Shown here in pieces: positions 1 to 54,832 of a stretch of DNA of 64,000 nucleotides. Under the pieces are notes generated by a model, which saw nothing but the letters and a program-made list of their open reading frames with translations, did no database searches and was not told the origin of the DNA. How positions within the stretch are numbered: the stretch's first letter is position 1; every line of letters starts with the position of its first letter. Location of the stretch: positions 255,519-319,518 of the IMG/VR virus record IMGVR_UViG_3300033997_000243; one strand, given 5' to 3'. Position numbers and translations under genes: made by a program.

Positions 1-1744
1 TATCACGATTAGAGTCAAACCACCCAAGTTCATCCAGGGCTCCGAGTATACGAGTACGACCACGAAGTACACGTTTGTCTGGAGTTGCCGGATAAAGTTT
101 AAGGTTTCTATGACGATAATCAATAAAGGTATCTTTTAGCTTTAGTAGAACTTCTCCGTATTTCTTTTCATAACGACGAAGCATTAAGTGATAAGCTTTA
201 AACCAAGGACTATTATTTATGTAACCGAGAAAAGGTTCCCATAAGTTTTGTGTTGCTTGTCCAAGTGTAAGTGCAAGGAAAGTTCCATGCAATATTTCGT
301 TATTACGAATATTGAAAAGTTCAGTTGGTTTACCACACATCAAAAACAAATGCACTATATAAGCACTTATCATGGTAACAACCGCAGACTTGCCGCTGTT
401 ATGTGAATCAATGCCATTGGTAATAAAATGTTGTGTGATAGGCATTGTAACATCGTACATGACTTCAGTTCTATCTGTAACTCCGCAGCTAACAACGGAT
501 AAAAGATGCCGATTTCTTTTGACGGATCTGTGATCATCAAATAATATATTTCGGTTTTCGTTTGAGATAGAAATGGAGATTGTTTCTGAGGTATTTTGAA
601 TTGTAGGCAGAATGCCAATGTTTAGCAGCAAGGCATAAACATCTTTTACTAATTGGCGGTAAGCAATAGGATATTGCGTTGTGTTGTTGTCGAATATTCC
701 ACGTAGAAATTCTCGACAATTTTTCATACTATATTTTAAAAGATCTGGATGTAAGCCTTTACCATCCACTGTATCGACCAACAAGTCTAGTCGATTTGTA
801 ATATCAGATCCTATAGAGCGTAATTCATCAACTGTATAAGGGCAGTTTAAATTTCCCCAACAATTTTGTCCGGTTTGTACAACAACTTGCTCACCAGCTT
901 TTATTTGGTGCAAAGCACGATAACCAAACTTTTCAACACGAACAGGATGGTCAAGAGTTCCACTTAAAGTAGATCCATTATCCAGCTGTAGTGTGTAAAC
1001 GTGTTCGGCTTTCGTTATATAAAATTCTTTTGTTGTCTCAAGCTTTTCACCGTTGAATACAGGATATTTAAAATCATTGTAACCCTGTTTAGCATTGCGC
1101 GGAACAAGATCTCCAATTCTTTCAATACCTTTTCCAGTGAAAATATGAGTATCGCCAGTAACACAACGCTGTCCAGCAACAACTACAAGTTCGTTATAGA
1201 AATTTAGTTCACCACTTGCAATAAGTTCGGATTTACGTGCGCCACACTTTGGACAAACACCATGATGCAAAAGAGACACTTTTCTGGAAAGTGTTGCTAA
1301 TGGTTCATCTGCCGAGTGTCCATCATCAGAAAACCATTTTAAATCAGAACATTCAGGTCTTGGACAATACTCAGCAAAAAGTTTGATACCTATTATGGCC
1401 TGTTCGAGATAAGGCGTGGAACTAAGAAAACTTTCATCGTTAGCAAACTGTAAGAAGTTTTTTGCTATCGGCATAGAACTGTCATCTATACGCAAATCTT
1501 TAGAGATCGGCCTAGCATTATCCAGTTCATCATATATAAGTTGTTCGAGATCTAAGACTTCATGGCCATCTTCTAAATCATGCTTAAAATGATGGCCATC
1601 ATCGTCGTCATCGTCGTCATGTACTATTGTGACGCTTTCATCGTCATCTTCACCCAACAAATTGAATAAATCATCTAATGGTTTAATTGCACTAGGTTTT
1701 TTGGCTTTACCTATTGGCTTCTTTTTCTTTATCTGCTTTACCAT
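1..1744 (-). CDS. terL: Terminase large subunit, intein-containing (3' end beyond window)
   Basis: Manual translation from ATG at 1744 is open to the window edge. The spliced Walker A reads VVVAGQR/SGKS, followed by LRGRTRILGALDELGWFD (motif III/Walker B). Confidence 0.9.
   Translation of the reverse strand, partial: MVKQIKKKKPIGKAKKPSAIKPLDDLFNLLGEDDDESVTIVHDDDDDDDGHHFKHDLEDGHEVLDLEQLIYDELDNARPISKDLRIDDSSMPIAKNFLQFANDESFLSSTPYLEQAIIGIKLFAEYCPRPECSDLKWFSDDGHSADEPLATLSRKVSLLHHGVCPKCGARKSELIASGELNFYNELVVVAGQRCVTGDTHIFTGKGIERIGDLVPRNAKQGYNDFKYPVFNGEKLETTKEFYITKAEHVYTLQLDNGSTLSGTLDHPVRVEKFGYRALHQIKAGEQVVVQTGQNCWGNLNCPYTVDELRSIGSDITNRLDLLVDTVDGKGLHPDLLKYSMKNCREFLRGIFDNNTTQYPIAYRQLVKDVYALLLNIGILPTIQNTSETISISISNENRNILFDDHRSVKRNRHLLSVVSCGVTDRTEVMYDVTMPITQHFITNGIDSHNSGKSAVVTMISAYIVHLFLMCGKPTELFNIRNNEILHGTFLALTLGQATQNLWEPFLGYINNSPWFKAYHLMLRRYEKKYGEVLLKLKDTFIDYRHRNLKLYPATPDKRVLRGRTRILGALDELGWFDSNRD
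398..1165 (-). mobile_element. Intein (256 aa) in the terminase Walker A motif
   Basis: Starts CVTGDTHI, block B GTLDHPV, ends TNGIDSHN followed by Ser; remnant LAGLIDADG-like FLRGIFD. Confidence 0.92.
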
Positions 1745-39014: not shown

Positions 39015-39695
39015 TTATACCCAAGAACGCATGTTTAATTGCATTCTTTTCAATGCTTGTTTATGAAGATTACTTATGCGAGGCACACAAAGTTCCATAC
39101 GATTTCCAATCTCTTCCATGTTAAGATCGCGCATATAGTAAAGATTAACTACAATGGATTCCTGCTTTGGCAGTTTTGATACGAATACTTTTAAAGCAGA
39201 TCCTAACTTTGTGACCTCGCACTGACGATCCACAAAATCCACTTCAGTGCAGAAACCGTCAAAGTTGCTTTCATTGAGTTCACTGTCAAGTAACACATGA
39301 ATGCTGTGTGTTTCACGTTCGAGTTTATTAAACTCTTCGATAGAAATATTCAGCTCACGAGCAATTTCAATATTTGTTGGAACGCGCAAAAACTTCTGCT
39401 CTAATGCAGAACGCACTTCATTTAGTTTACGAGCTTCTGCACAAACATTTTTAGGAATCCAACCTAGTTTTCTGGCCTCGTCTAACATTGAACCGTAAAC
39501 TCGAATTCCAGCAAAAGTTTGAAAAGAAGTGCCAGAGTTTGAATCATAACGATCAATCGACTCCAGTATTCCAAGCATACCAGCTTGGATTAAATCATCC
39601 AGCTGTATACTCGCGGAAAGTTTGCCAATTAAACTGTTGGCAATGCGTTTAACCATAACCATATTATCCGCAATAATTTTTTGTTTGCTATTCAT
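39015..39695 (-). CDS. fliA: RNA polymerase sigma factor, FliA/WhiG (sigma28) family
   Basis: VKRIA, LDDLIQAGMLGIL..IDRYD...GTSFQTFAGIRVYGSMLDEARK..WIP, region 4 LNMEEIG...RISNLHKQALKR. Confidence 0.92.
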   Translation of the reverse strand: MNSKQKIIADNMVMVKRIANSLIGKLSASIQLDDLIQAGMLGILESIDRYDSNSGTSFQTFAGIRVYGSMLDEARKLGWIPKNVCAEARKLNEVRSALEQKFLRVPTNIEIARELNISIEEFNKLERETHSIHVLLDSELNESNFDGFCTEVDFVDRQCEVTKLGSALKVFVSKLPKQESIVVNLYYMRDLNMEEIGNRMELCVPRISNLHKQALKRMQLNMRSWV

Positions 39696-44659: not shown

Positions 44660-44691
44660 AAAAGGGAACCCCGAAAGAGGTTCCCTTTTTT
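44660..44691. terminator. Bidirectional intrinsic terminator
   Basis: AAAAGGGAACC...GGTTCCCTTTTTT between convergent genes. Confidence 0.85.
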
Positions 44692-44694
44692 GAT

Positions 44695-45138
44695 CTAACT
44701 TGGATGTTTTATTTTCAGTGCTTTTTTAATTGCGCGTGTTAAAGAAGGAGAAAGCCTCGGAGCTTCTTTAACTTTGGTTCCAGATAAAATCATTATCTTG
44801 CCTTTATCGGGATTTGATATGCGATCAATCAAAGCACTGAGTTCGGCAGGTTTTAATTTTTCATCGGAAAGATCGACAGATAGAATTTCGTATTCTTCAA
44901 TTTGCTGCAAAGTCATTTCATTGGTAGGTAGGAAAGTAATCTCAGTAACAAGATCTTTATCAATGAATACGCTTGAAAATACGCGAACGGTAGCTTGTCC
45001 TGCTTCGGCCACTATTCGATTTTTATCCGCAGAACTAAGTTCTGCAAAATCAGAAAGTTTTCGATAGGCTTCGGCCATTGTCCAACGCACACCAGAAAAT
45101 GTGAGTCTAGGGCTGTTTAAGTGGCATAATATTCTCAT
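44695..45138 (-). CDS. Hypothetical protein
   Basis: 147 aa, overlaps tmk stop. Confidence 0.7.
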   Translation of the reverse strand: MRILCHLNSPRLTFSGVRWTMAEAYRKLSDFAELSSADKNRIVAEAGQATVRVFSSVFIDKDLVTEITFLPTNEMTLQQIEEYEILSVDLSDEKLKPAELSALIDRISNPDKGKIMILSGTKVKEAPRLSPSLTRAIKKALKIKHPS

Positions 45139-45770
45139 ACATCACCAAAAGCTTTACGCGCACACATTAAAATCATTTCCGCAGTATCTTCAATACTAAC
45201 TCCATTTATGTCGAAAGTGACTAAACTTTTCGCAACAGTATGATCCATATTGCTAAGAGCAAACATGCGGTCATATTCGGCACCAATCTTTTCTCTGAAC
45301 TCAAAATACTCAAACTCAATTCGATCTTCAGGCTCTTTTACTTTGCCTGAGTTAGTTCCGTAAAAAATCATATCAGGAACCAAGGTATCTAAACTCAGTA
45401 TTTTACGCAGGTTATAAAAGTGCTCAAGTGGAAAACCTTTACCTCCACACTGAAAAGCTCTTGTTGAAAAATCCCAACGATCTGCAACAACATTAACGCC
45501 AGCGGCAAGTTGTGATCTTACGTAAGGAACCAATTGCGCTCTGGCAGCAAACATTAAAAGAGTTTCTGCTTCTACAGTAAACTTTTCATCAGAGTTATTA
45601 GCATTACCTTTTACCACAGTACGTATCTGTTCTGCAATCGGAGTTCCTCCAGGTTCGCGTACTTGAATAGTCGGGCCAAATATTTTAGTAAGATTTGCCG
45701 TCAATATTTTTGCTTGTTCACTTTTACCAACACCATCCAATCCTTCAAGTACAAAAAATTTACCTTGCAT
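45135..45770 (-). CDS. tmk: Thymidylate kinase
   Basis: FFVLEGLDGVGKS, REPGGT, LMFAARAQ, VVADR; start at MQGKF. Confidence 0.93.
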   Translation of the reverse strand: MQGKFFVLEGLDGVGKSEQAKILTANLTKIFGPTIQVREPGGTPIAEQIRTVVKGNANNSDEKFTVEAETLLMFAARAQLVPYVRSQLAAGVNVVADRWDFSTRAFQCGGKGFPLEHFYNLRKILSLDTLVPDMIFYGTNSGKVKEPEDRIEFEYFEFREKIGAEYDRMFALSNMDHTVAKSLVTFDINGVSIEDTAEMILMCARKAFGDV

Positions 45771-45792
45771 AGTTATTTCCCCAGTTAAGATC

Positions 45793-45818
45793 AAAAAAGG
45801 CCACAGCAAAGTGGCCTT
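45793..45818 (-). terminator. Intrinsic terminator closing the structured-RNA region
   Basis: AGGCCAC-TTTGCT-GTGGCCT-TTTTT on the minus strand. Confidence 0.8.
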
Positions 45819-45824
45819 GTGTTT

Positions 45825-46838
45825 AATAGATTTTTGTTCTGACGGCAAAACGCAACAGACTGTAATATGTACTGGTGCTCGAACAAAGCCAGTGCGAAAG
45901 TTGAATCTTACCGTCAGAACAAAAATCTATTTTATTCGGTGGGTTTGTTTTCCTTGTCCAAAATGCGAACAACAAACCCACCTGCTGGATTATTTAATAT
46001 CGGTATTGCGGCTACCGAGATTTGTTCTTACCCTCTCAACAAGATAAGGAGTCATGTAAATAACAAATCGCCAAGCATCATATCAACGAGTGCTTATAGT
46101 GAGCAGGTTTATGCTCCACTTGTACAACGCGAACAGTTAACCAACCTTTAAGGTCAAAGTAATCTGTTATACGTTGAATGTTGGTTGATATGCGAAAACT
46201 TTCTACGGATGACCGCCGTAAATTGTTTTCGCGGTTAATACAAATCGTTAGAAAAAAGATGAATAGAGTTACCATGAATATTCCTGTATAGCGGCATTTC
46301 AAATACACGACCCAAGAATTGAAGCAAGGAAAAAAGTCCAAAAACCTACAACAATTCAAAGTCTAAACATTGCTTAATGTTAGATTAAGGTTTGTACTCT
46401 CAGCGGGAGTTCGCGTCAGCACGTTCATGTTTTGAAATAACGAATGAGTGCGTGAGATACTCACAATACTAACCGACTTGGAGGGACGCAAGTATTGTCT
46501 CGTTGTTTTTCCTCTATAAGTTCATCAGCACAGCGGCAAGGAAGAATCCGCCTCACACAAAACTTTTTCAAGGACTGCTTAAACTAATGCCGCGAAAAAT
46601 TAGAATGCCTGTTCGACACAACTTGCTTGGAACCCCACGTACCTAAAAGGAGATCGAACAGACAAAGATGTTAAAGGAGATTCCACTAAAAATCTCGAAG
46701 TTAGGCTACTTCGTATAAAGTCTAGTCAAGGGATCTAGCTTGACATAATAAACTTTGCACTGCATACCAGCGCACAAGCAACGGCTGTTCTGACCTAAGA
46801 CAAAAAATGTCTCTGCTTGCAGATCTAAAGTGGAATCT
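45825..46838 (-). ncRNA. Candidate large structured ncRNA, or a cluster of ncRNAs (about 1 kb)
   Basis: No credible CDS; dense run of stems including a perfect 21-bp stem; minus-strand terminator at the end. Confidence 0.55.
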
Positions 46839-47169
46839 ACTTTAACATATTCAAAATATCTTCAAATTCTTCTGTAGTCAATTGGTTTCGTTCAACTAAA
46901 ATTTTCATGTAATTCAAATACAAACCTTTTGAGTAAGAAGTTTGGGCTATCAAGAATTCTACTTCAGGCCAACGACATTTCTTTTCGCGCAAAACAATTA
47001 AAGCGCATCTGTAAGGTATTCTATTTGGAGGCAAAGAAGTTAAAGCTTGCTTAAGCGTTGTAAATCTTCGCATCTGACTCCAATAAAAAGCGCAGAATTT
47101 TTCTTTGTTGTTAAGTTCAAGAAAATGTTTAGAATAAAATTCAGGGCAATTTAAAAACTCTGGTTCCAT
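46837..47169 (-). CDS. Hypothetical protein
   Basis: 110-aa ORF inside the RNA island. Confidence 0.55.
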   Translation of the reverse strand: MEPEFLNCPEFYSKHFLELNNKEKFCAFYWSQMRRFTTLKQALTSLPPNRIPYRCALIVLREKKCRWPEVEFLIAQTSYSKGLYLNYMKILVERNQLTTEEFEDILNMLK

Positions 47170-47402
47170 AAATGATTACCAAATAAAGATTCCTGTTCAG
47201 TGATACACTTAAACCACCAACTTTTCATAGTCTCCTACGCGGCTAAGTGCATGACTATCTTAAGTTACTTAGCTAACTGAAATAAGTTTAGTGTTGGAAT
47301 CAAAAACTTAGCGCAATCAAAATAACAAAAACTAAAACAAGAGAAAGCAGATAGGGTTTTAATTCTGAATAATCTGGAAGCATTTTTGTTACCTGTTGAA
47401 AG

Positions 47403-47477
<75 letters not shown>

Positions 47478-47519
47478 ATTAACCATGTTTACCTGTTGAA
47501 ACATGGAAAGTCACTGAAA

Positions 47520-47872
47520 AGCAATTTCAACAAACAGCCTCTAGTGGAAAGCATTACACTATAACCATCTATCTTATATGCTTTGATAAACGTGATCAGA
47601 TCGCCAATCAGATTCGGTGGCGCTAATACAAAACAAAGAATTTCTCATGACAGCTACTCACGTATCTCGCATGTCGATGCAAACGAATAAACTTGTTTTG
47701 TAAAACCAGTCTTGCGACCAGAAACAGCACTTAGAGGACGCTAGAGTGCCGAAATAAAAAAGACCGTAAGAAATTCTTACACAAACTATCGGAAAGGATG
47801 TAGCGCAGACACAATCCAGTTCCTGAGTTTAGTTGCCAAACAAATACATGCAAAGTTTGGCAGGTCAGGGAA
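47520..47872 (-). ncRNA. Candidate structured ncRNA (about 350 nt) upstream of the tRNA
   Basis: Multiple stems, a GCAA tetraloop and G-U pairs on the minus strand; no ORF. Confidence 0.55.
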
Positions 47873-47874
47873 AT

Positions 47875-50427: not shown

Positions 50428-52659
50428 TTATTCGTCATCAGTATCGATTTTTTCTTTACTGCGTTTGACGATTTGATCTTTGTAGCGTTTCGGGCCTTTT
50501 CCACTTGCACAATGTTTAGAACACCATGTACGAATGTTTCCAGCTTTCTTCAAACCAACTCGCTCACAAACTTCGGTGATTTGTTTTTTACTACCAAGAA
50601 CAAGAACTTTGAAATCTTCAAAGCTTAATTTTTTCGCACCATGCAGTGGAACATCTGGATGGAACTTTAAGTTGTTTCTTGTTCCATCTACATACCCAAG
50701 TTGTTTTAAATACTCAAAGGTATCAAAAACTGGATCGAATCCACGAGCACGACCGTCACCATCAGTAACCCAAACACGCGCCCAAACTTCACGGTTAGGA
50801 ATACCACCGAGTTTGTTTTTGACAGTACGCAAACAGATGAAACGATAAATATCTTTACCGCCTTCAACAGTCACAGAATTTTCTTCCATGATACCTTTAT
50901 CAAGAACAAAACCGTAAGGTGCAGATCCACGAGAAGTAGATTTTATACGAACGTCTGAGTTATGGCTAACAATTCCGTTAGTGATAATTGTATGCGTGTC
51001 AGGCATGTTTGCATCGTAAGTCTGCTCAGCTTCTTGATATTCAATATCGACAATTTCGTCAGTAAGATAATCGACATCGCAAGAAAGATCCAAGACAGAA
51101 ACAGTATAAAAGTTCTCTACCTTTTCTAACTTTGAAAATACACAACTATCAAGAAGTAGTAACTGGAAATCTACTGCGTGTTGGTAGTGTCTGTGGGTAT
51201 TAGTTACAGAACTATATCCTTTAATATAAGCACTAACAAGATCGGAAGATCCTGTCCTTATATTAAATGGAACTCCATGTAAGGAATCCAACTGACCTAA
51301 ACCTACCTTGACGCCTGTATTATAAGCATCTTGATAATCAAGATCAGAATTGCTTGATACAGGTCTAGTAATTTCGTTTGATGGTTTAATCAAAACAAAT
51401 TTACCAACAGTCAAAGAATCAAGTCTAGCAAATTGATAGTTACTTGGTGATTTAGCTTGGTCATTAGCTAAAACCTGATGTCCATGTTTGCCGCGCAGTG
51501 TATAGCCATTTGATGTAGTAATTTTAATGATATTATCTACACCAGTATCGTCGAAGATTGTCGGAGATTCCAAACCGCATTTACCTTGAATTTTAGGTAA
51601 AGAGTGTCTGAATTTTTCGTAGTATTCTTCAACAGATACCAACCCAAGTTCTGTTCTGATTCGAGTTTCAGGTGCCAGACAGAAAAATTTGAGCGCTTCC
51701 CCGGAAGGCTCATACTCAGGATTACCGTGCATAACAGCAGGACGTAAACGTAATTGGTTTACACCAAAAACAGTCATACGTTTTTTACGCATACCGCTTC
51801 GTACTTTTTTAATACCAGCAGCGTGCATACGTGCTTGTTCTGCCATAGCTTCATTACGATCATCATCATCTAAGCCTTCAGGCAACATGGCCGGATAACT
51901 ATCAACGATTGATACTGCTTGCATAAAGCCATCTGGAGCAGGAATACGAATTTTATTTGTTTTAGTCAAATACTTGACATCGTACTTACCAGAAAACTTC
52001 TTTTTGTTTTCTTGCGTATGTTCGTAAACATACCAATACTTATCACCGATTTTTTGTACGTCAGGCAGTGCGCGACGAAGTTTTGCTTGGTAACGATAAA
52101 AATCTTCGCCAACATCAGGCATGTAGTAACGAATTTTTGGTTTAATCAACCAAGAACCAGTATCGTCATCTTTGATACCGAATATTGTAGTAGCATCAGA
52201 TTTTAATCCAAGCGCTTCCATCATGTTACCGATATATTCAATGTCGGTAGAGCCTTCGTAATCAAAAATACTGGCAGCAATTTTTCTGTTTAATTCATCA
52301 ATAGCATTCTGAATCATACAGAGAAGAGTCATTGTCAATGTCGATTTACAGCTTTGTTCACCACCATAAATAGTGTACCAACCGCCACCAACAATACCGC
52401 CATTAAGAAGTAAATCAAGAGCCAACAGCCCTGTGGACAATCTTTTTTCATCACGGTCAACCAAACTGCTTGAAAGGCCATATTTCTTTTCAACACCATC
52501 AAGCAAATCATCGATGTCGTCAGCAGGAGAATAACCACGAGCATCTTCAATAGCAGAGTCTACAATTTCTTTGGCAGACTTGCCTTTTGATTTACCCTTT
52601 TTCTTTGACTCTTCTACAGCAACGTCATCATCAATGTCTAACTTTTTCTTTTTAGCCAT
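50428..52659 (-). CDS. recA: RecA/UvsX-like recombinase, intein-containing
   Basis: LSTGLLALDLLL.GG, IYGGEQSCKST, DYEG, IVDS, VNQLR, PSGEALKFF/SDVRI, VKNK. Confidence 0.93.
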   Translation of the reverse strand: MAKKKKLDIDDDVAVEESKKKGKSKGKSAKEIVDSAIEDARGYSPADDIDDLLDGVEKKYGLSSSLVDRDEKRLSTGLLALDLLLNGGIVGGGWYTIYGGEQSCKSTLTMTLLCMIQNAIDELNRKIAASIFDYEGSTDIEYIGNMMEALGLKSDATTIFGIKDDDTGSWLIKPKIRYYMPDVGEDFYRYQAKLRRALPDVQKIGDKYWYVYEHTQENKKKFSGKYDVKYLTKTNKIRIPAPDGFMQAVSIVDSYPAMLPEGLDDDDRNEAMAEQARMHAAGIKKVRSGMRKKRMTVFGVNQLRLRPAVMHGNPEYEPSGEALKFFCLAPETRIRTELGLVSVEEYYEKFRHSLPKIQGKCGLESPTIFDDTGVDNIIKITTSNGYTLRGKHGHQVLANDQAKSPSNYQFARLDSLTVGKFVLIKPSNEITRPVSSNSDLDYQDAYNTGVKVGLGQLDSLHGVPFNIRTGSSDLVSAYIKGYSSVTNTHRHYQHAVDFQLLLLDSCVFSKLEKVENFYTVSVLDLSCDVDYLTDEIVDIEYQEAEQTYDANMPDTHTIITNGIVSHNSDVRIKSTSRGSAPYGFVLDKGIMEENSVTVEGGKDIYRFICLRTVKNKLGGIPNREVWARVWVTDGDGRARGFDPVFDTFEYLKQLGYVDGTRNNLKFHPDVPLHGAKKLSFEDFKVLVLGSKKQITEVCERVGLKKAGNIRTWCSKHCASGKGPKRYKDQIVKRSKEKIDTDDE
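50959..51681 (-). mobile_element. Intein (241 aa) in RecA
   Basis: Starts CLAPETRI, ends TYDANM...ITNGIVSHN followed by Ser. Confidence 0.92.
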
Positions 52660-53809: not shown

Positions 53810-53821
53810 TATTTACAGTTT
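53810..53821 (-). promoter_or_regulatory. Class-II promoter motif AAACTGTAAATA
   Basis: About 38 nt upstream of the SSB start. Confidence 0.6.
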
Positions 53822-54832
53822 AGACAGAGTATGCCGTTCCATTAACTCTAGCTCTGCCTCAGTAAATACCTCTGGTATCTCAAGCGTAAGTCTGGCCAAT
53901 CCAAAAGGATCTGCTCTTTTTGCCATGAGATATAATCGCCTTAGTTCATGATCGACAGCATGTTCATCAGAAAGATCTTCTGTTTCTGCCGTAAGTAATT
54001 CATGTAAATTTCCATCTTCATCTTCACCCTGAGAAAGTAAGGTGTCCATTGAAGTTGAAAAGTTTACATTTGAACTATGACCACCACTCAAAGTTTTCTT
54101 GTGGTTCTGTGGGATAACATAAGCTATTCCATATTCATGTTCAGAACTTGCACAAGTAAGACTGTTGAGAATCCAATACTTTATATATGACGTTAAAGCG
54201 CCTTTGCTACTGTCATATTTGTTTAGTGCTACCACAACATTACGCAAAAAGTTTTGCACCACATCTTTGTAGTCGTAATTATTTCCAGTGTTTGTATCAA
54301 TCAAATGTTTTGCATGTGTATAACAAAACTTATGATACTGCTCAACAACACTGTTGAAATATTTGTAGAATAAGGCCAGATACTCAGAAGGCTGAGTAAT
54401 AGCAACGAAAACATCTTGTATACTATCTGCACCCAAAAGAGCTTTGTAAGGAACCATCCGATCACGATAAAAAATTCTTCGCTTTGGTTCGCTCATATAA
54501 TGGAAATAAAGTTCCATGTATACGTCTTTGTATTCGGCTAAAAATTTCTTTATGAAAACATGAACAAAAGATCTTTCGATCTTGAGTTTTTTGATCAGCT
54601 CGAACTTACGAATGCGGTCAGGACAAACTATGGCTTGTGCCAAAATGTCTATGGTCTGAGATCTTTCAAGAGCACAAAACTTTCGTTTTTTGTTTTTTAT
54701 AACAGCGGTTAGTAAATAGATAAGTTGACTGTCAAAGACATTTGTATGGATCACTATTGGTTCAAGTGCTTTATATAAAAGCGTGTCCATTATTTCTTGT
54801 ATTTGACCGCCTGTTAAATTTTCTTTACTCAC
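53813..54832 (-). CDS. Divergent phage sigma70-family factor
   Basis: DYKDVVQN...VALNKYDSSKGALTSYIKYWILNSL (region 2); SMDTLL...LHELL (region 3.2-like); region 4 not evident. Confidence 0.75.
   Translation of the reverse strand: MSKENLTGGQIQEIMDTLLYKALEPIVIHTNVFDSQLIYLLTAVIKNKKRKFCALERSQTIDILAQAIVCPDRIRKFELIKKLKIERSFVHVFIKKFLAEYKDVYMELYFHYMSEPKRRIFYRDRMVPYKALLGADSIQDVFVAITQPSEYLALFYKYFNSVVEQYHKFCYTHAKHLIDTNTGNNYDYKDVVQNFLRNVVVALNKYDSSKGALTSYIKYWILNSLTCASSEHEYGIAYVIPQNHKKTLSGGHSSNVNFSTSMDTLLSQGEDEDGNLHELLTAETEDLSDEHAVDHELRRLYLMAKRADPFGLARLTLEIPEVFTEAELELMERHTLSKL

What the first reader, a model, noticed from the sequence alone, without database searches (positions are those of the whole stretch)
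45825..46838. About 1 kb of densely structured non-coding sequence: candidate novel large phage ncRNA
Seen, in an otherwise gene-packed genome: a perfect 21-bp stem (45825-45845/45911-45931), a 12-bp stem (45938-45982), stems near 46000-46018, 46192-46232, 46463-46498 and 46609-46661, and a multibranch domain closed by AGATTCCACT/AGTGGAATCT (46678-46838). A minus-strand terminator follows at 45793. Most wobble pairs favour the minus strand and one inner stem favours plus. No tmRNA, RNase P or intron hallmarks were recognised. Established: GOLLD and ROOL are large structured RNAs often near phage tRNA genes. Inference: a divergent member of these or a new class. This is my strongest candidate for an undescribed system here.
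Basis: partly seen in the sequence, partly recalled or inferred. Interest (0 to 1): 0.78.

Follow-up and report, generated by a model that had tools for sequence, protein, structure and literature searches.

The report
New large structured phage RNA candidate
A 1.05-kb stretch with no gene in an uncultured jumbo phage is conserved like an enzyme gene and keeps its RNA helices through compensating mutations, so it most likely encodes a large folded non-coding RNA of a family not yet described; its function and its transcription remain untested.

Summary
The minus strand folds far better than shuffles (1,000 nt: z -7.4, against -4.7 for the plus strand and -2.35 for a coding control).

The key evidence is comparative. 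A second clade of the same uncultured jumbo-phage lineage keeps a gap of the same size. It is 85% identical there, as conserved as thymidylate kinase (86.5%) and more than ORF110 (77%) or ORF147 (67-69%). It contains a 96-nt invariant run. Substitutions show no codon periodicity. Every ORF of 28 aa or more is broken in the other clade, except one that lies mostly inside the invariant run.

RNAalifold finds 312 pairs, 21 of them compensated. With a structure predicted from one sequence only, the other clade gives 14-20 compensated pairs (null 3.6 +/- 1.8) and 28-36 broken (null 61-64 +/- 5). Wobble-type changes favour the minus strand.

Rfam 15 gives no real match, so this is not GOLLD, ROOL, OLE, an intron, tmRNA or RNase P. 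No other homologue was found.

Verdict: a probable new family of large structured phage RNA, GOLLD/ROOL-like only in genomic context. Limits: two clades only, long-range helices unverified, transcription unproven, function unknown.

The parts
45793..46838 (-). Whole candidate RNA, about 1,046 nt. It runs from the first conserved helix, which overlaps the ORF110 stop codon, to the U-tract of the intrinsic terminator.
   Evidence: Conservation jumps from about 70% to 100% exactly at the ORF110 stop. The gap is 85% identical between clades, against 77% for ORF110 and 67-69% for ORF147. RNAalifold gives 312 pairs, 21 of them compensated. Permutation test. No ORF is conserved outside the invariant run.
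46678..46838 (-). 5' multibranch domain D1. A 10+5-bp closing helix encloses four or five hairpins.
   Evidence: Folds alone: MFE -61.3 kcal/mol, z -7.16, MFE frequency 0.18. It is 89% identical between clades. Three inner pairs are compensated and five show one-sided G-U-type changes.
46606..46664 (-). Hairpin D2: an 11-bp stem with an apical GGGGUUCC element.
   Evidence: Only 68% identical between clades, yet the stem is kept by two compensated pairs (UA to CG, CG to UA) plus one more in the apical helix.
46510..46574 (-). Hairpin domain D3.
   Evidence: One compensated pair and three pairs broken or gapped. This is the weakest supported domain.
46403..46498 (-). Invariant 96-nt core. It contains the conserved hairpin loop GCGUCCCUCC.
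   Evidence: Identical in all four aligned sequences while the region as a whole differs by 15%. Local folding is not exceptional (z -1.26 for 46233-46474). A wastewater DNA run holds only 46356-46524, at depth 17, with no flanks at 80% likeness or more.
46287..46321 (-). Second invariant block (35 nt). It is predicted to form a 17-bp long-range helix with 46425-46442 in the core.
   Evidence: Both strands of the helix are invariant, so covariation can neither support nor refute it.
45938..46232 (-). Series of 3' hairpins: 46192-46232, 46125-46176, 46098-46120, 46072-46096, 46019-46069, 46000-46018 and 45938-45982.
   Evidence: z -5.69. Only 78% identical between clades, but it holds 12 of the compensated pairs. 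Examples: 3 in 46192-46232 (plus 5 one-sided), 3 in 46019-46069, 3 in 45938-45982. No pair is broken.
45825..45931 (-). Long hairpin: 31 pairs, with the outer 21 bp perfect. Candidate double-strand-specific processing site (RNase III type) or structural arm.
   Evidence: I2. It is 93% identical between clades, with one AU to GC compensation in the perfect part. The role in processing is inference.
45793..45818 (-). Intrinsic terminator (8-bp stem with 5 G-C pairs, 6-nt loop, U6). It ends 22 nt before the tmk start codon.
   Evidence: Invariant between clades apart from one loop base and one base 5' of the stem.
46837..47169 (-). ORF110, the flanking upstream protein gene. It is not part of the RNA, but its stop codon overlaps the first helix.
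   Evidence: Substitutions are biased to the third codon position (24/14/39). Remote homologues exist in other phages in contexts without the RNA.
45135..45770 (-). Thymidylate kinase gene, directly downstream. It can only be transcribed by read-through of the terminator or from a promoter inside the RNA.
   Evidence: Pfam Thymidylate_kin, E 1.4e-22. Only 22 nt separate the U-tract from the ATG.
47403..47477 (-). tRNA-Gly(UCC), same strand, 565 nt upstream of the RNA.
   Evidence: ARAGORN and Rfam tRNA, 59.9 bits.

Best explanation
Window 45,793-46,838 (minus strand) is the gene of a conserved, highly structured non-coding RNA of about 1.05 kb. It belongs to a family not in Rfam.

It is read in the same direction as all its neighbours. 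It probably sits on a transcript that also carries tRNA-Gly and ORF110, since no conserved promoter of its own was found. It ends at an intrinsic terminator 22 nt before the thymidylate kinase start codon.

The molecule has these parts:
- a very stable 5' multibranch domain;
- variable hairpins held together by compensatory changes;
- an invariant 96-nt core whose conservation is not explained by simple helices, and which is inferred to be a tertiary-contact, partner-binding or catalytic centre;
- a string of 3' hairpins;
- a long, nearly perfect hairpin that may be a double-strand-specific processing site.

I propose that it accumulates as a stable, trans-acting folded RNA particle during infection, as GOLLD and ROOL do in other phages, while leaky read-through of its terminator feeds tmk-ORF147.

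Shown: conservation, absence of coding signal, covariation in local helices, strand, terminator.
Inferred: a single 1-kb molecule, long-range fold, processing, trans action, function.
For: - Size and conservation. The gap is kept at the same size (1,062-1,068 nt) in a second clade (L005, L011). It is 85% identical, like tmk (86.5%) and above ORF110 (77%) and ORF147 (67-69%).
- Invariant runs of 96 nt and 35 nt.
- No coding signal. Substitutions by position mod 3 are 60/41/57, against 15/12/58 in tmk. All ORFs of 28 aa or more are interrupted in clade B, except a 42-aa TTG ORF lying mostly inside the invariant run. Where that ORF does vary, the codon changes I read are mostly non-synonymous and coincide with compensated pairs. 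No Pfam hits.
- RNAalifold: 312 pairs, 21 compensated, about 6 broken.
- Non-circular test, with the structure taken from one sequence and the substitutions from the other clade: 14-20 compensated against a null of 3.6 +/- 1.8, and 28-36 broken against 61-64 +/- 5. None of 2,000 permutations reached either value.
- Strand. One-sided G-U-type changes are 27 on the minus strand against 8 on the plus strand. Broken pairs are 28-36 against 43-50. Folding z is -7.4 against -4.7.
- Terminator at the 3' end.
- Sharp onset of conservation at the ORF110 stop codon.
- Context like GOLLD/ROOL: phage-encoded and near a tRNA gene (10.1101/2024.12.08.627333).
Against: - Only two clades (about 15% apart) are available. 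Each variable column therefore records essentially one event, and R-scape-type statistics have no power.
- Every helix with compensatory support is local. All long-range helices lie in invariant sequence and are untested.
- The central region folds no better than shuffles.
- Transcription is not demonstrated. The 'RNA-Seq' metagenome runs hold flanking genes too and may contain DNA, and the higher depth of the core also appears in a DNA run.
- The sigma-70-like promoter just upstream (46881-46853) is not conserved in clade B.
- No partner gene was found. ORF110 homologues occur without the RNA.
Confidence: 0.6

Rival explanations
1. Cis-acting leader. The structured region is a very long 5' untranslated region and processing platform that sets expression of tmk-ORF147. 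It would act through the terminator 22 nt before the tmk start, through cleavage at the long hairpin, and through a predicted long-range pairing that covers the tmk ribosome-binding site.
For: The terminator abuts the tmk start with no room for a promoter. RNAalifold pairs 46578-46598 with 45776-45795, which includes GGGGAAA, the tmk Shine-Dalgarno sequence. A strong second terminator closes the unit after ORF147 at 44660-44689. There are weak Rfam look-alikes to leader or sRNA-plus-terminator shapes at 45785-45963 (E 0.015-0.04, far below threshold).
Against: No known attenuator or riboswitch needs about 1 kb. The invariant core lies 600-700 nt from the terminator. The RBS-covering helix is invariant and therefore unsupported. 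The related Dickeya phage JA29 expresses tmk without any such leader. A leader role could also coexist with a trans-acting RNA.
Confidence: 0.15
2. Cluster of several independent small RNAs or processing hairpins, comparable to the stable small RNAs next to the T4 tRNA genes. The region would be beads on a string rather than one large folded molecule.
For: All helices with compensatory support are local hairpins or the 161-nt D1 domain. Excess thermodynamic stability is concentrated in separate blocks. The long hairpin could be a processing site that releases pieces.
Against: No internal promoter-like or convincing terminator-like signals were found apart from weak hits inside D1. Conservation is continuous over the full kilobase. 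The two invariant blocks are predicted to pair with each other over about 120 nt.
Confidence: 0.15
3. DNA-level element (replication origin, packaging or recombination site) or a decaying former gene. In this reading the hairpins are incidental or act in single-stranded DNA.
For: The region lies within a replication and nucleotide-metabolism module that includes topoisomerase II, a DnaB-like helicase, a RecA-like protein and tmk. The invariant core is not explained by secondary structure.
Against: The compensatory changes and the strand-asymmetric G-U pattern fit RNA. There is no GC-skew inflection and there are no iterons or direct-repeat families. A decaying gene would not be as conserved as tmk or hold a 96-nt invariant run.
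Confidence: 0.05
4. A highly divergent member of GOLLD or ROOL.
For: Phage-encoded, large, ornate, same strand as a nearby tRNA gene.
Against: There is no hit to either Rfam model, nor to any other large-RNA family, at E<=10 on the isolated 1.08 kb, on 3 kb or at gathering thresholds on the whole window. No blastn match to any of 50,697 phage records.
Confidence: 0.03

Closest known systems
[quoted passage not shown]
   Same: Phage or prophage-encoded. Very large (many members above 800 nt). Often next to or downstream of tRNA genes. A conserved part sits beside a more variable part. Function unknown (10.1101/2024.12.08.627333).
   Different: No match to the Rfam model. This RNA is longer (about 1,046 nt). 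Its most conserved block is central rather than 3'. It is separated from the tRNA by a protein gene. Multimeric cage formation is untested.
ROOL RNA (Rumen-Originating, Ornate, Large)
   Same: Phage or prophage-encoded large structured RNA, often near tRNA islands, with no known protein partner.
   Different: No match to the Rfam model. It is nearly twice the size of ROOL (the ROOL env-120 studied by cryo-EM is 659 nt). The pseudoknots that characterise ROOL were not assessed here.
OLE RNA and other large bacterial ncRNAs (raiA motif, HEARO/IscB omega RNA)
   Same: Large, conserved, multi-helix non-coding RNAs recognised by comparative analysis.
   Different: No Rfam match. No associated ole-type or IscB/TnpB-type protein genes were found among the neighbours scanned. 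The host here is a phage, not a bacterial chromosome.
Stable small RNAs beside the tRNA genes of phage T4 (from my own knowledge, not tested here)
   Same: Non-coding, stable, co-transcribed with phage tRNAs and released by processing. Function still unknown.
   Different: Those are roughly 120-140 nt. Here the conserved structured stretch is continuous for about 1 kb.
RNase III processing hairpins of phage early transcripts such as T7 (from my own knowledge)
   Same: A long, nearly perfect hairpin (21 bp perfect, 31 pairs in all) lies at the 3' end of a phage transcript, just before the next gene.
   Different: That would explain about 107 nt of the region only. Cleavage is untested.

Membership tests
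GOLLD RNA | Significant match to the family covariance model (conserved 3' core with its helices and pseudoknots) | tested here: not met
   cmscan against Rfam 15 gave no GOLLD hit on the whole window at gathering score, on 3 kb at E<=10 or on the isolated 1.08 kb at E<=10.
GOLLD RNA | Phage or prophage location, often near tRNA genes | tested here: met
   The contig is a jumbo-phage contig. tRNA-Gly lies 565 nt upstream on the same strand.
GOLLD RNA | Self-assembly into a closed RNA-only multimer (14-mer cage) | not testable with these tools
   Needs cryo-EM or SEC-MALS of the transcript (describes the property).
ROOL RNA | Significant match to the family covariance model | tested here: not met
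   No ROOL hit.
ROOL RNA | Phage or prophage location, often near tRNA islands | tested here: met
   Only one tRNA gene is present in the 64-kb window, so this is not an island.
Group I / group II introns | Match to the intron core models (group I core; group II domains D1-D4 and D5) and interruption of a host gene | tested here: not met
   No intron model hit in the gap. ORF110 and tmk are both complete on either side.
tmRNA / RNase P RNA / 6S / SRP RNA | Match to the family model | tested here: not met
   ARAGORN found no tmRNA. Rfam gave no hits.
Protein-coding gene or pseudogene | Conserved open reading frame, third-position bias of substitutions, family match | tested here: not met
   ORFs are broken in clade B. 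Substitutions by position mod 3 are 60/41/57, against 15/12/58 in tmk. No Pfam hits at E<=0.09. The 42-aa ORF query found no candidates.
Structured non-coding RNA (generic) | Helices maintained by compensatory and wobble-compatible substitutions beyond chance | tested here: met
   21 compensated pairs of 312. Permutation test: 0 of 2,000 permutations reached the observed values. Limited to two clades.
Structured non-coding RNA (generic) | Expressed as a discrete RNA | tested here: inconclusive
   Metagenome 'RNA-Seq' contigs cover parts of the gap and also the flanking genes. DNA carry-over cannot be excluded and contigs carry no strand information.

The most novel reading that the evidence does not exclude
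This is the founding member of a new class of giant (about 1.05 kb, larger than GOLLD) ornate phage RNA. In this reading it folds into a defined tertiary or quaternary architecture around an invariant 96-nt core and acts in trans during jumbo-phage infection, for example by sequestering translation components or tRNA, or as a ribozyme or scaffold. The wastewater run that holds only the core suggests a wider family with divergent flanks that is not yet in assembled databases.
Probability: 0.35. Interest if true: 0.85.

Novelty: new variant of a known kind. Interest (0 to 1): 0.64.

Why it matters
Only a handful of bacterial or phage non-coding RNAs exceed 500 nt and fold elaborately: rRNAs, group II introns, RNase P, tmRNA, OLE, GOLLD and ROOL. 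Each has turned out to be a machine, or an assembly of an unexpected kind. GOLLD and ROOL were recently shown to form RNA-only cages larger than a ribosome, and their function is still unknown.

A further, unrelated RNA of more than 1 kb in the same genomic niche (phage, beside a tRNA gene) would show that such RNAs are a recurrent phage invention. It would also give a second, independent system in which to ask what they do. The invariant 96-nt core is a compact, testable handle for mutagenesis, pull-downs and wider database mining.

Tried and rejected
**Similarity searches that found nothing**
- Rfam at three sensitivities: nothing real.
- blastn of the gap against 50,697 phage records, near and distant modes: no match.

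**Exact-word scans with 18- to 20-mers from the invariant blocks**
- IMG/VR, JGI metagenomes and GTDB genomes.
- These returned only the two clade-A contigs plus three chance hits.
- L015 shows no other similarity.
- L018 looks like coding sequence and matches only about 21 nt.
- L022 is a 51% GC contig from a MAG.
- nhmmer and blastn showed all three are not homologues.

**Searches through neighbouring proteins**
- ORF110 has only two near clusters.
- tmk has one 90% relative and then bacterial tmk at 40%.
- Remote ORF110 homologues lie in other contexts, with no similarity to the RNA.
- The closest cultured phages by topoisomerase II are Phage NCTB and the Dickeya phages JA29, JA11 and AD1. 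In JA29, tmk has no upstream gap and the locus shows no nhmmer hit.
- The ORF262 neighbour is not shared with these phages.

**Other attempts**
- Using the 42-aa ORF in the core as a protein probe for short contigs: no candidates.
- Reads: one read-laying run gave no usable transcription evidence.
- The sigma-70-like promoter at 46881-46853 was rejected because it is not conserved in clade B.
- The phage-specific motif AAGTGTGTCAAAAAT does not occur near the RNA.
- The second apparent 1.1-kb gap at 619-1706 is a gene running off the window.
- ORF110 in the protein Atlas gave no informative hit.

**Deliberately left out**
- I did not build covariance models, because no further target sequences were available to search.
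- I did not use the count of structure pairs, because it needs a kilobase-long typed structure string. A permutation test in a script replaced it.

Full report
**Where the window comes from**

The window matches at 100% an IMG/VR contig of 319.5 kb. A second, 214.5-kb contig is nearly identical. Genes lie almost all on the minus strand. They include topoisomerase II subunits, a DnaB-like helicase, a RecA-like protein with an intein, thymidylate kinase (tmk) and two sigma-70-family proteins. The nearest cultured phages are only about 44-50% identical in topoisomerase II: Phage NCTB and the Dickeya and Erwinia jumbo phages. The source is therefore an uncultured jumbo phage.

**The observation**

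The stretch 45,773-46,836 lies between ORF110 (46,837-47,169, minus) and tmk (45,135-45,770, minus). It is the largest gene-free gap in the window. Another apparent gap at 619-1,706 is a gene that runs off the window start.

So is a minus-strand intrinsic terminator at 45,797-45,818 followed by T6. It ends 22 nt before the tmk ATG.

Folding energies:

| Stretch | z-score |
|---|---|
| Minus strand, 1,000 nt | -7.39 |
| Plus strand, 1,000 nt | -4.67 |
| Coding control, 1,000 nt | -2.35 |
| 5' domain 46,678-46,838 | -7.16 |
| 3' hairpin series 45,938-46,232 | -5.69 |
| Long hairpin (300-nt window) | -9.2 |
| Centre 46,233-46,474 | -1.26 |

The excess stability is therefore not uniform. The two ends carry it and the centre is unremarkable.

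**Known families**

Rfam 15 gives only the neighbouring tRNA-Gly at gathering thresholds. At E<=10 there is nothing real, either on 3 kb or on the isolated 1.08 kb. The best scores are 31 and 27 bits for a small RNA and a leader whose thresholds are 99 and 55. They reflect the hairpin-plus-terminator shape only.

There are no matches to GOLLD, ROOL, OLE, introns, tmRNA, RNase P or 6S RNA. blastn against 50,697 phage records finds nothing.

**Relatives**

Through ORF110 and tmk I recovered more copies of the same clade, here called clade A: L002, L006 and L007. I also recovered a second clade, B: L005 (a 3.2-kb Logan contig) and L011 (a 329-kb ENA contig).

In clade B the gap is still there and has the same size (1,062-1,068 nt). 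Nucleotide identity between clades A and B:

| Segment | Identity |
|---|---|
| The gap | 85% |
| tmk | 86.5% |
| ORF110 | 77% |
| ORF147 | 67-69% |

Conservation rises from about 70% to 100% exactly at the ORF110 stop codon, where the first helix begins. Inside the gap there is a 96-nt run (46,403-46,498) and a 35-nt run (46,287-46,321) without a single change.

**Not coding**

- Substitutions in the gap show no periodicity (60/41/57 by position mod 3). The figures are 15/12/58 for tmk and 24/14/39 for ORF110.
- Every ORF of 28 aa or more is interrupted by stops or frameshifts in clade B. The one exception is a 42-aa TTG ORF that is preserved because most of it lies in the invariant run.
- Where that ORF does vary, its 3' tail, the codon changes I read are mostly non-synonymous. 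They coincide with compensated base pairs.
- Invariance at all three codon positions over 96 nt is also not what coding constraint produces.
- No Pfam family matches any of the ORFs.
- One gene caller did call the 94-aa plus-strand ORF in L007. It is broken in clade B.

**RNA structure**

RNAalifold on four distinct sequences (alignment A3) predicts 312 pairs. Of these, 21 keep pairing through changes on both sides, and about six have any broken or gapped cell.

To avoid circularity I predicted the structure from one sequence only. I then asked what the other clade's substitutions do to it:
- 14-20 pairs are compensated, against a permutation null of 3.6 +/- 1.8.
- 28-36 pairs are broken, against a null of 61-64 +/- 5.
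- None of 2,000 permutations reached either value.

The same test on the plus strand gives similar compensation, as it must, but 43-50 broken pairs. In the consensus structures the minus strand has 27 one-sided wobble-compatible changes against 8, and 55 pairs using G-U against 20. The transcript is therefore the minus strand, co-directional with the genes.

Compensated pairs are spread over the whole length:
- D1 (46,678-46,838);
- D2 (46,606-46,664);
- D3;
- 46,362-46,384;
- 46,192-46,232, with three compensated and five one-sided changes;
- 46,132-46,168;
- 46,098-46,120;
- 46,019-46,069, with three;
- 46,000-46,018;
- 45,938-45,982, with three;
- the long hairpin, with one.

All of these are local helices. 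The long-range helices lie in invariant sequence and cannot be tested with two clades:
- the D1 closing helix;
- 46,466-46,474/46,233-46,241;
- 46,425-46,442/46,292-46,310;
- a pairing of 46,578-46,598 with the tmk ribosome-binding site.

**Search for wider relatives**

Exact-word scans with 18- to 20-mers from the invariant blocks covered IMG/VR, JGI metagenomes and GTDB genomes. They returned only the clade-A contigs and three chance matches.

Remote homologues of ORF110 (31-50% identity) lie in other genomic contexts with no trace of the RNA. ORF110 is therefore not a dedicated partner.

Public-run indexing shows full copies in subsurface metagenomes. It shows partial shares in wastewater, drinking-water, air and other samples.

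**Reads**

Laying four runs on 5 kb gave no proof of transcription. The 'RNA-Seq' libraries also hold flanking genes at low depth and may contain DNA.

One wastewater DNA run holds only 46,356-46,524, at depth 17 and with one difference. Apart from tRNA look-alikes, it holds nothing else of the 5 kb at 80% likeness or more. This suggests the invariant core exists in further genomes with divergent flanks. That reading is an inference from a single 170-nt contig.

**Transcription unit**

- No conserved promoter precedes the RNA. The sigma-70-like hexamers at 46,881-46,853 are not kept in clade B.
- A phage-specific motif, AAGTGTGTCAAAAAT, is present nine times in intergenic regions on the minus strand. 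It is absent near the RNA.
- The RNA is therefore probably co-transcribed with tRNA-Gly (47,403-47,477) and ORF110, then released by processing.
- tmk has no room for a promoter after the terminator, so it depends on read-through or on a promoter inside the RNA.
- A strong terminator after ORF147 (44,660-44,689) closes the unit.

**Interpretation**

The best-supported reading is a new family of large structured non-coding RNA of about 1,046 nt. By genomic niche it resembles GOLLD and ROOL, which are phage-encoded and often near tRNA genes, of unknown function, and recently shown to form RNA-only cages (10.1101/2024.12.08.627333). It is not a member of either family. The large IMG/VR survey of structured RNAs reported only motifs of 29-151 nt (PMC10690425), and I found no description of this RNA.

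The rivals cannot be excluded:
- a giant cis-acting leader or processing platform for tmk;
- a cluster of small RNAs;
- a DNA-level element.

The last fits the strand-asymmetric covariation poorly.

What the RNA does is unknown. I commit, at modest confidence, to a stable trans-acting folded RNA whose invariant core is the functional centre, with terminator read-through supplying tmk.

**Limits**

- Only two clades are available.
- There is no expression evidence.
- No long-range covariation could be tested.
- Pseudoknots were not assessed.
- Only 64 kb of a 320-kb genome was examined.

Noticed in passing
window 47478-47874 and 47170-47402 (minus strand): The non-coding flanks of tRNA-Gly appear about 90% or more identical between the two phage clades, by my reading of the alignment. 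That is more conserved than the neighbouring protein genes. There is no Rfam match and no blastn match in phages apart from the tRNA itself. Covariation support is weak: 2 compensated pairs against a null of 1, and 23 broken against a null of 30 (P about 0.03).
   Followed up: partly
window 47489-47501 and 47389-47401 (minus strand): A 13-nt direct repeat, TTTCAACAGGTAA, brackets tRNA-Gly: 12 nt before its 5' end and 2 nt after its 3' end. In clade B both copies carry the same C-to-T change (CAACAGG becomes CAATAAG and CAATAGG). This could be a processing signal or the footprint of a mobile tRNA cassette.
   Followed up: partly
window 47151-47228 (minus strand): A 25-codon small ORF (MKSWWFKCITEQESLFGNHLWNQSF) with a strong AGGAGA ribosome-binding site overlaps the ORF110 start. 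L011 has a 29-nt insertion near its end.
   Followed up: no
window 10266, 21818, 21936, 23150, 23866, 30520, 35086, 42534, 44349 (minus strand): The 15-nt motif AAGTGTGTCAAAAAT recurs nine times with at most one mismatch. All copies are on the gene strand, and several fall between the ORFs listed. It is a candidate phage-specific promoter. It may be read with one of the two sigma-70-family proteins encoded at 39015-39695 and 53813-54832.
   Followed up: partly
window 50428-52659 (minus strand); L006 1-1724; L011 1-1222: The RecA-like gene carries an intein in the window (743 aa). A near-identical relative has a longer version with a LAGLIDADG domain (960 aa). In the clade-B contig the product is 502 aa with no intein domain on record. 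The intein content therefore varies among close relatives.
   Followed up: no
window 1-1706 (minus strand): This looks like a gap in the ORF list but reads as a gene running off the window start. It has an acidic stretch, a CxxC-type motif and an intein-like CVTGDT block. It was judged by eye from the sequence only and was used here as a coding control for folding (z -2.35).
   Followed up: partly
window 46356-46524, in run X13 (wastewater DNA): Apart from tRNA look-alikes, the only piece of the 5-kb stretch found in this 3-Gb run is a 170-nt contig covering the invariant core, at depth 17 and with one difference. This hints at unsampled relatives that share only the core.
   Followed up: partly
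L017 7802-8804 (Dickeya phage JA29, record 77406-78410): The related cultured jumbo phage has an unannotated gap of about 1 kb a few genes downstream of its tmk. nhmmer found no similarity to the RNA described here.
   Followed up: partly
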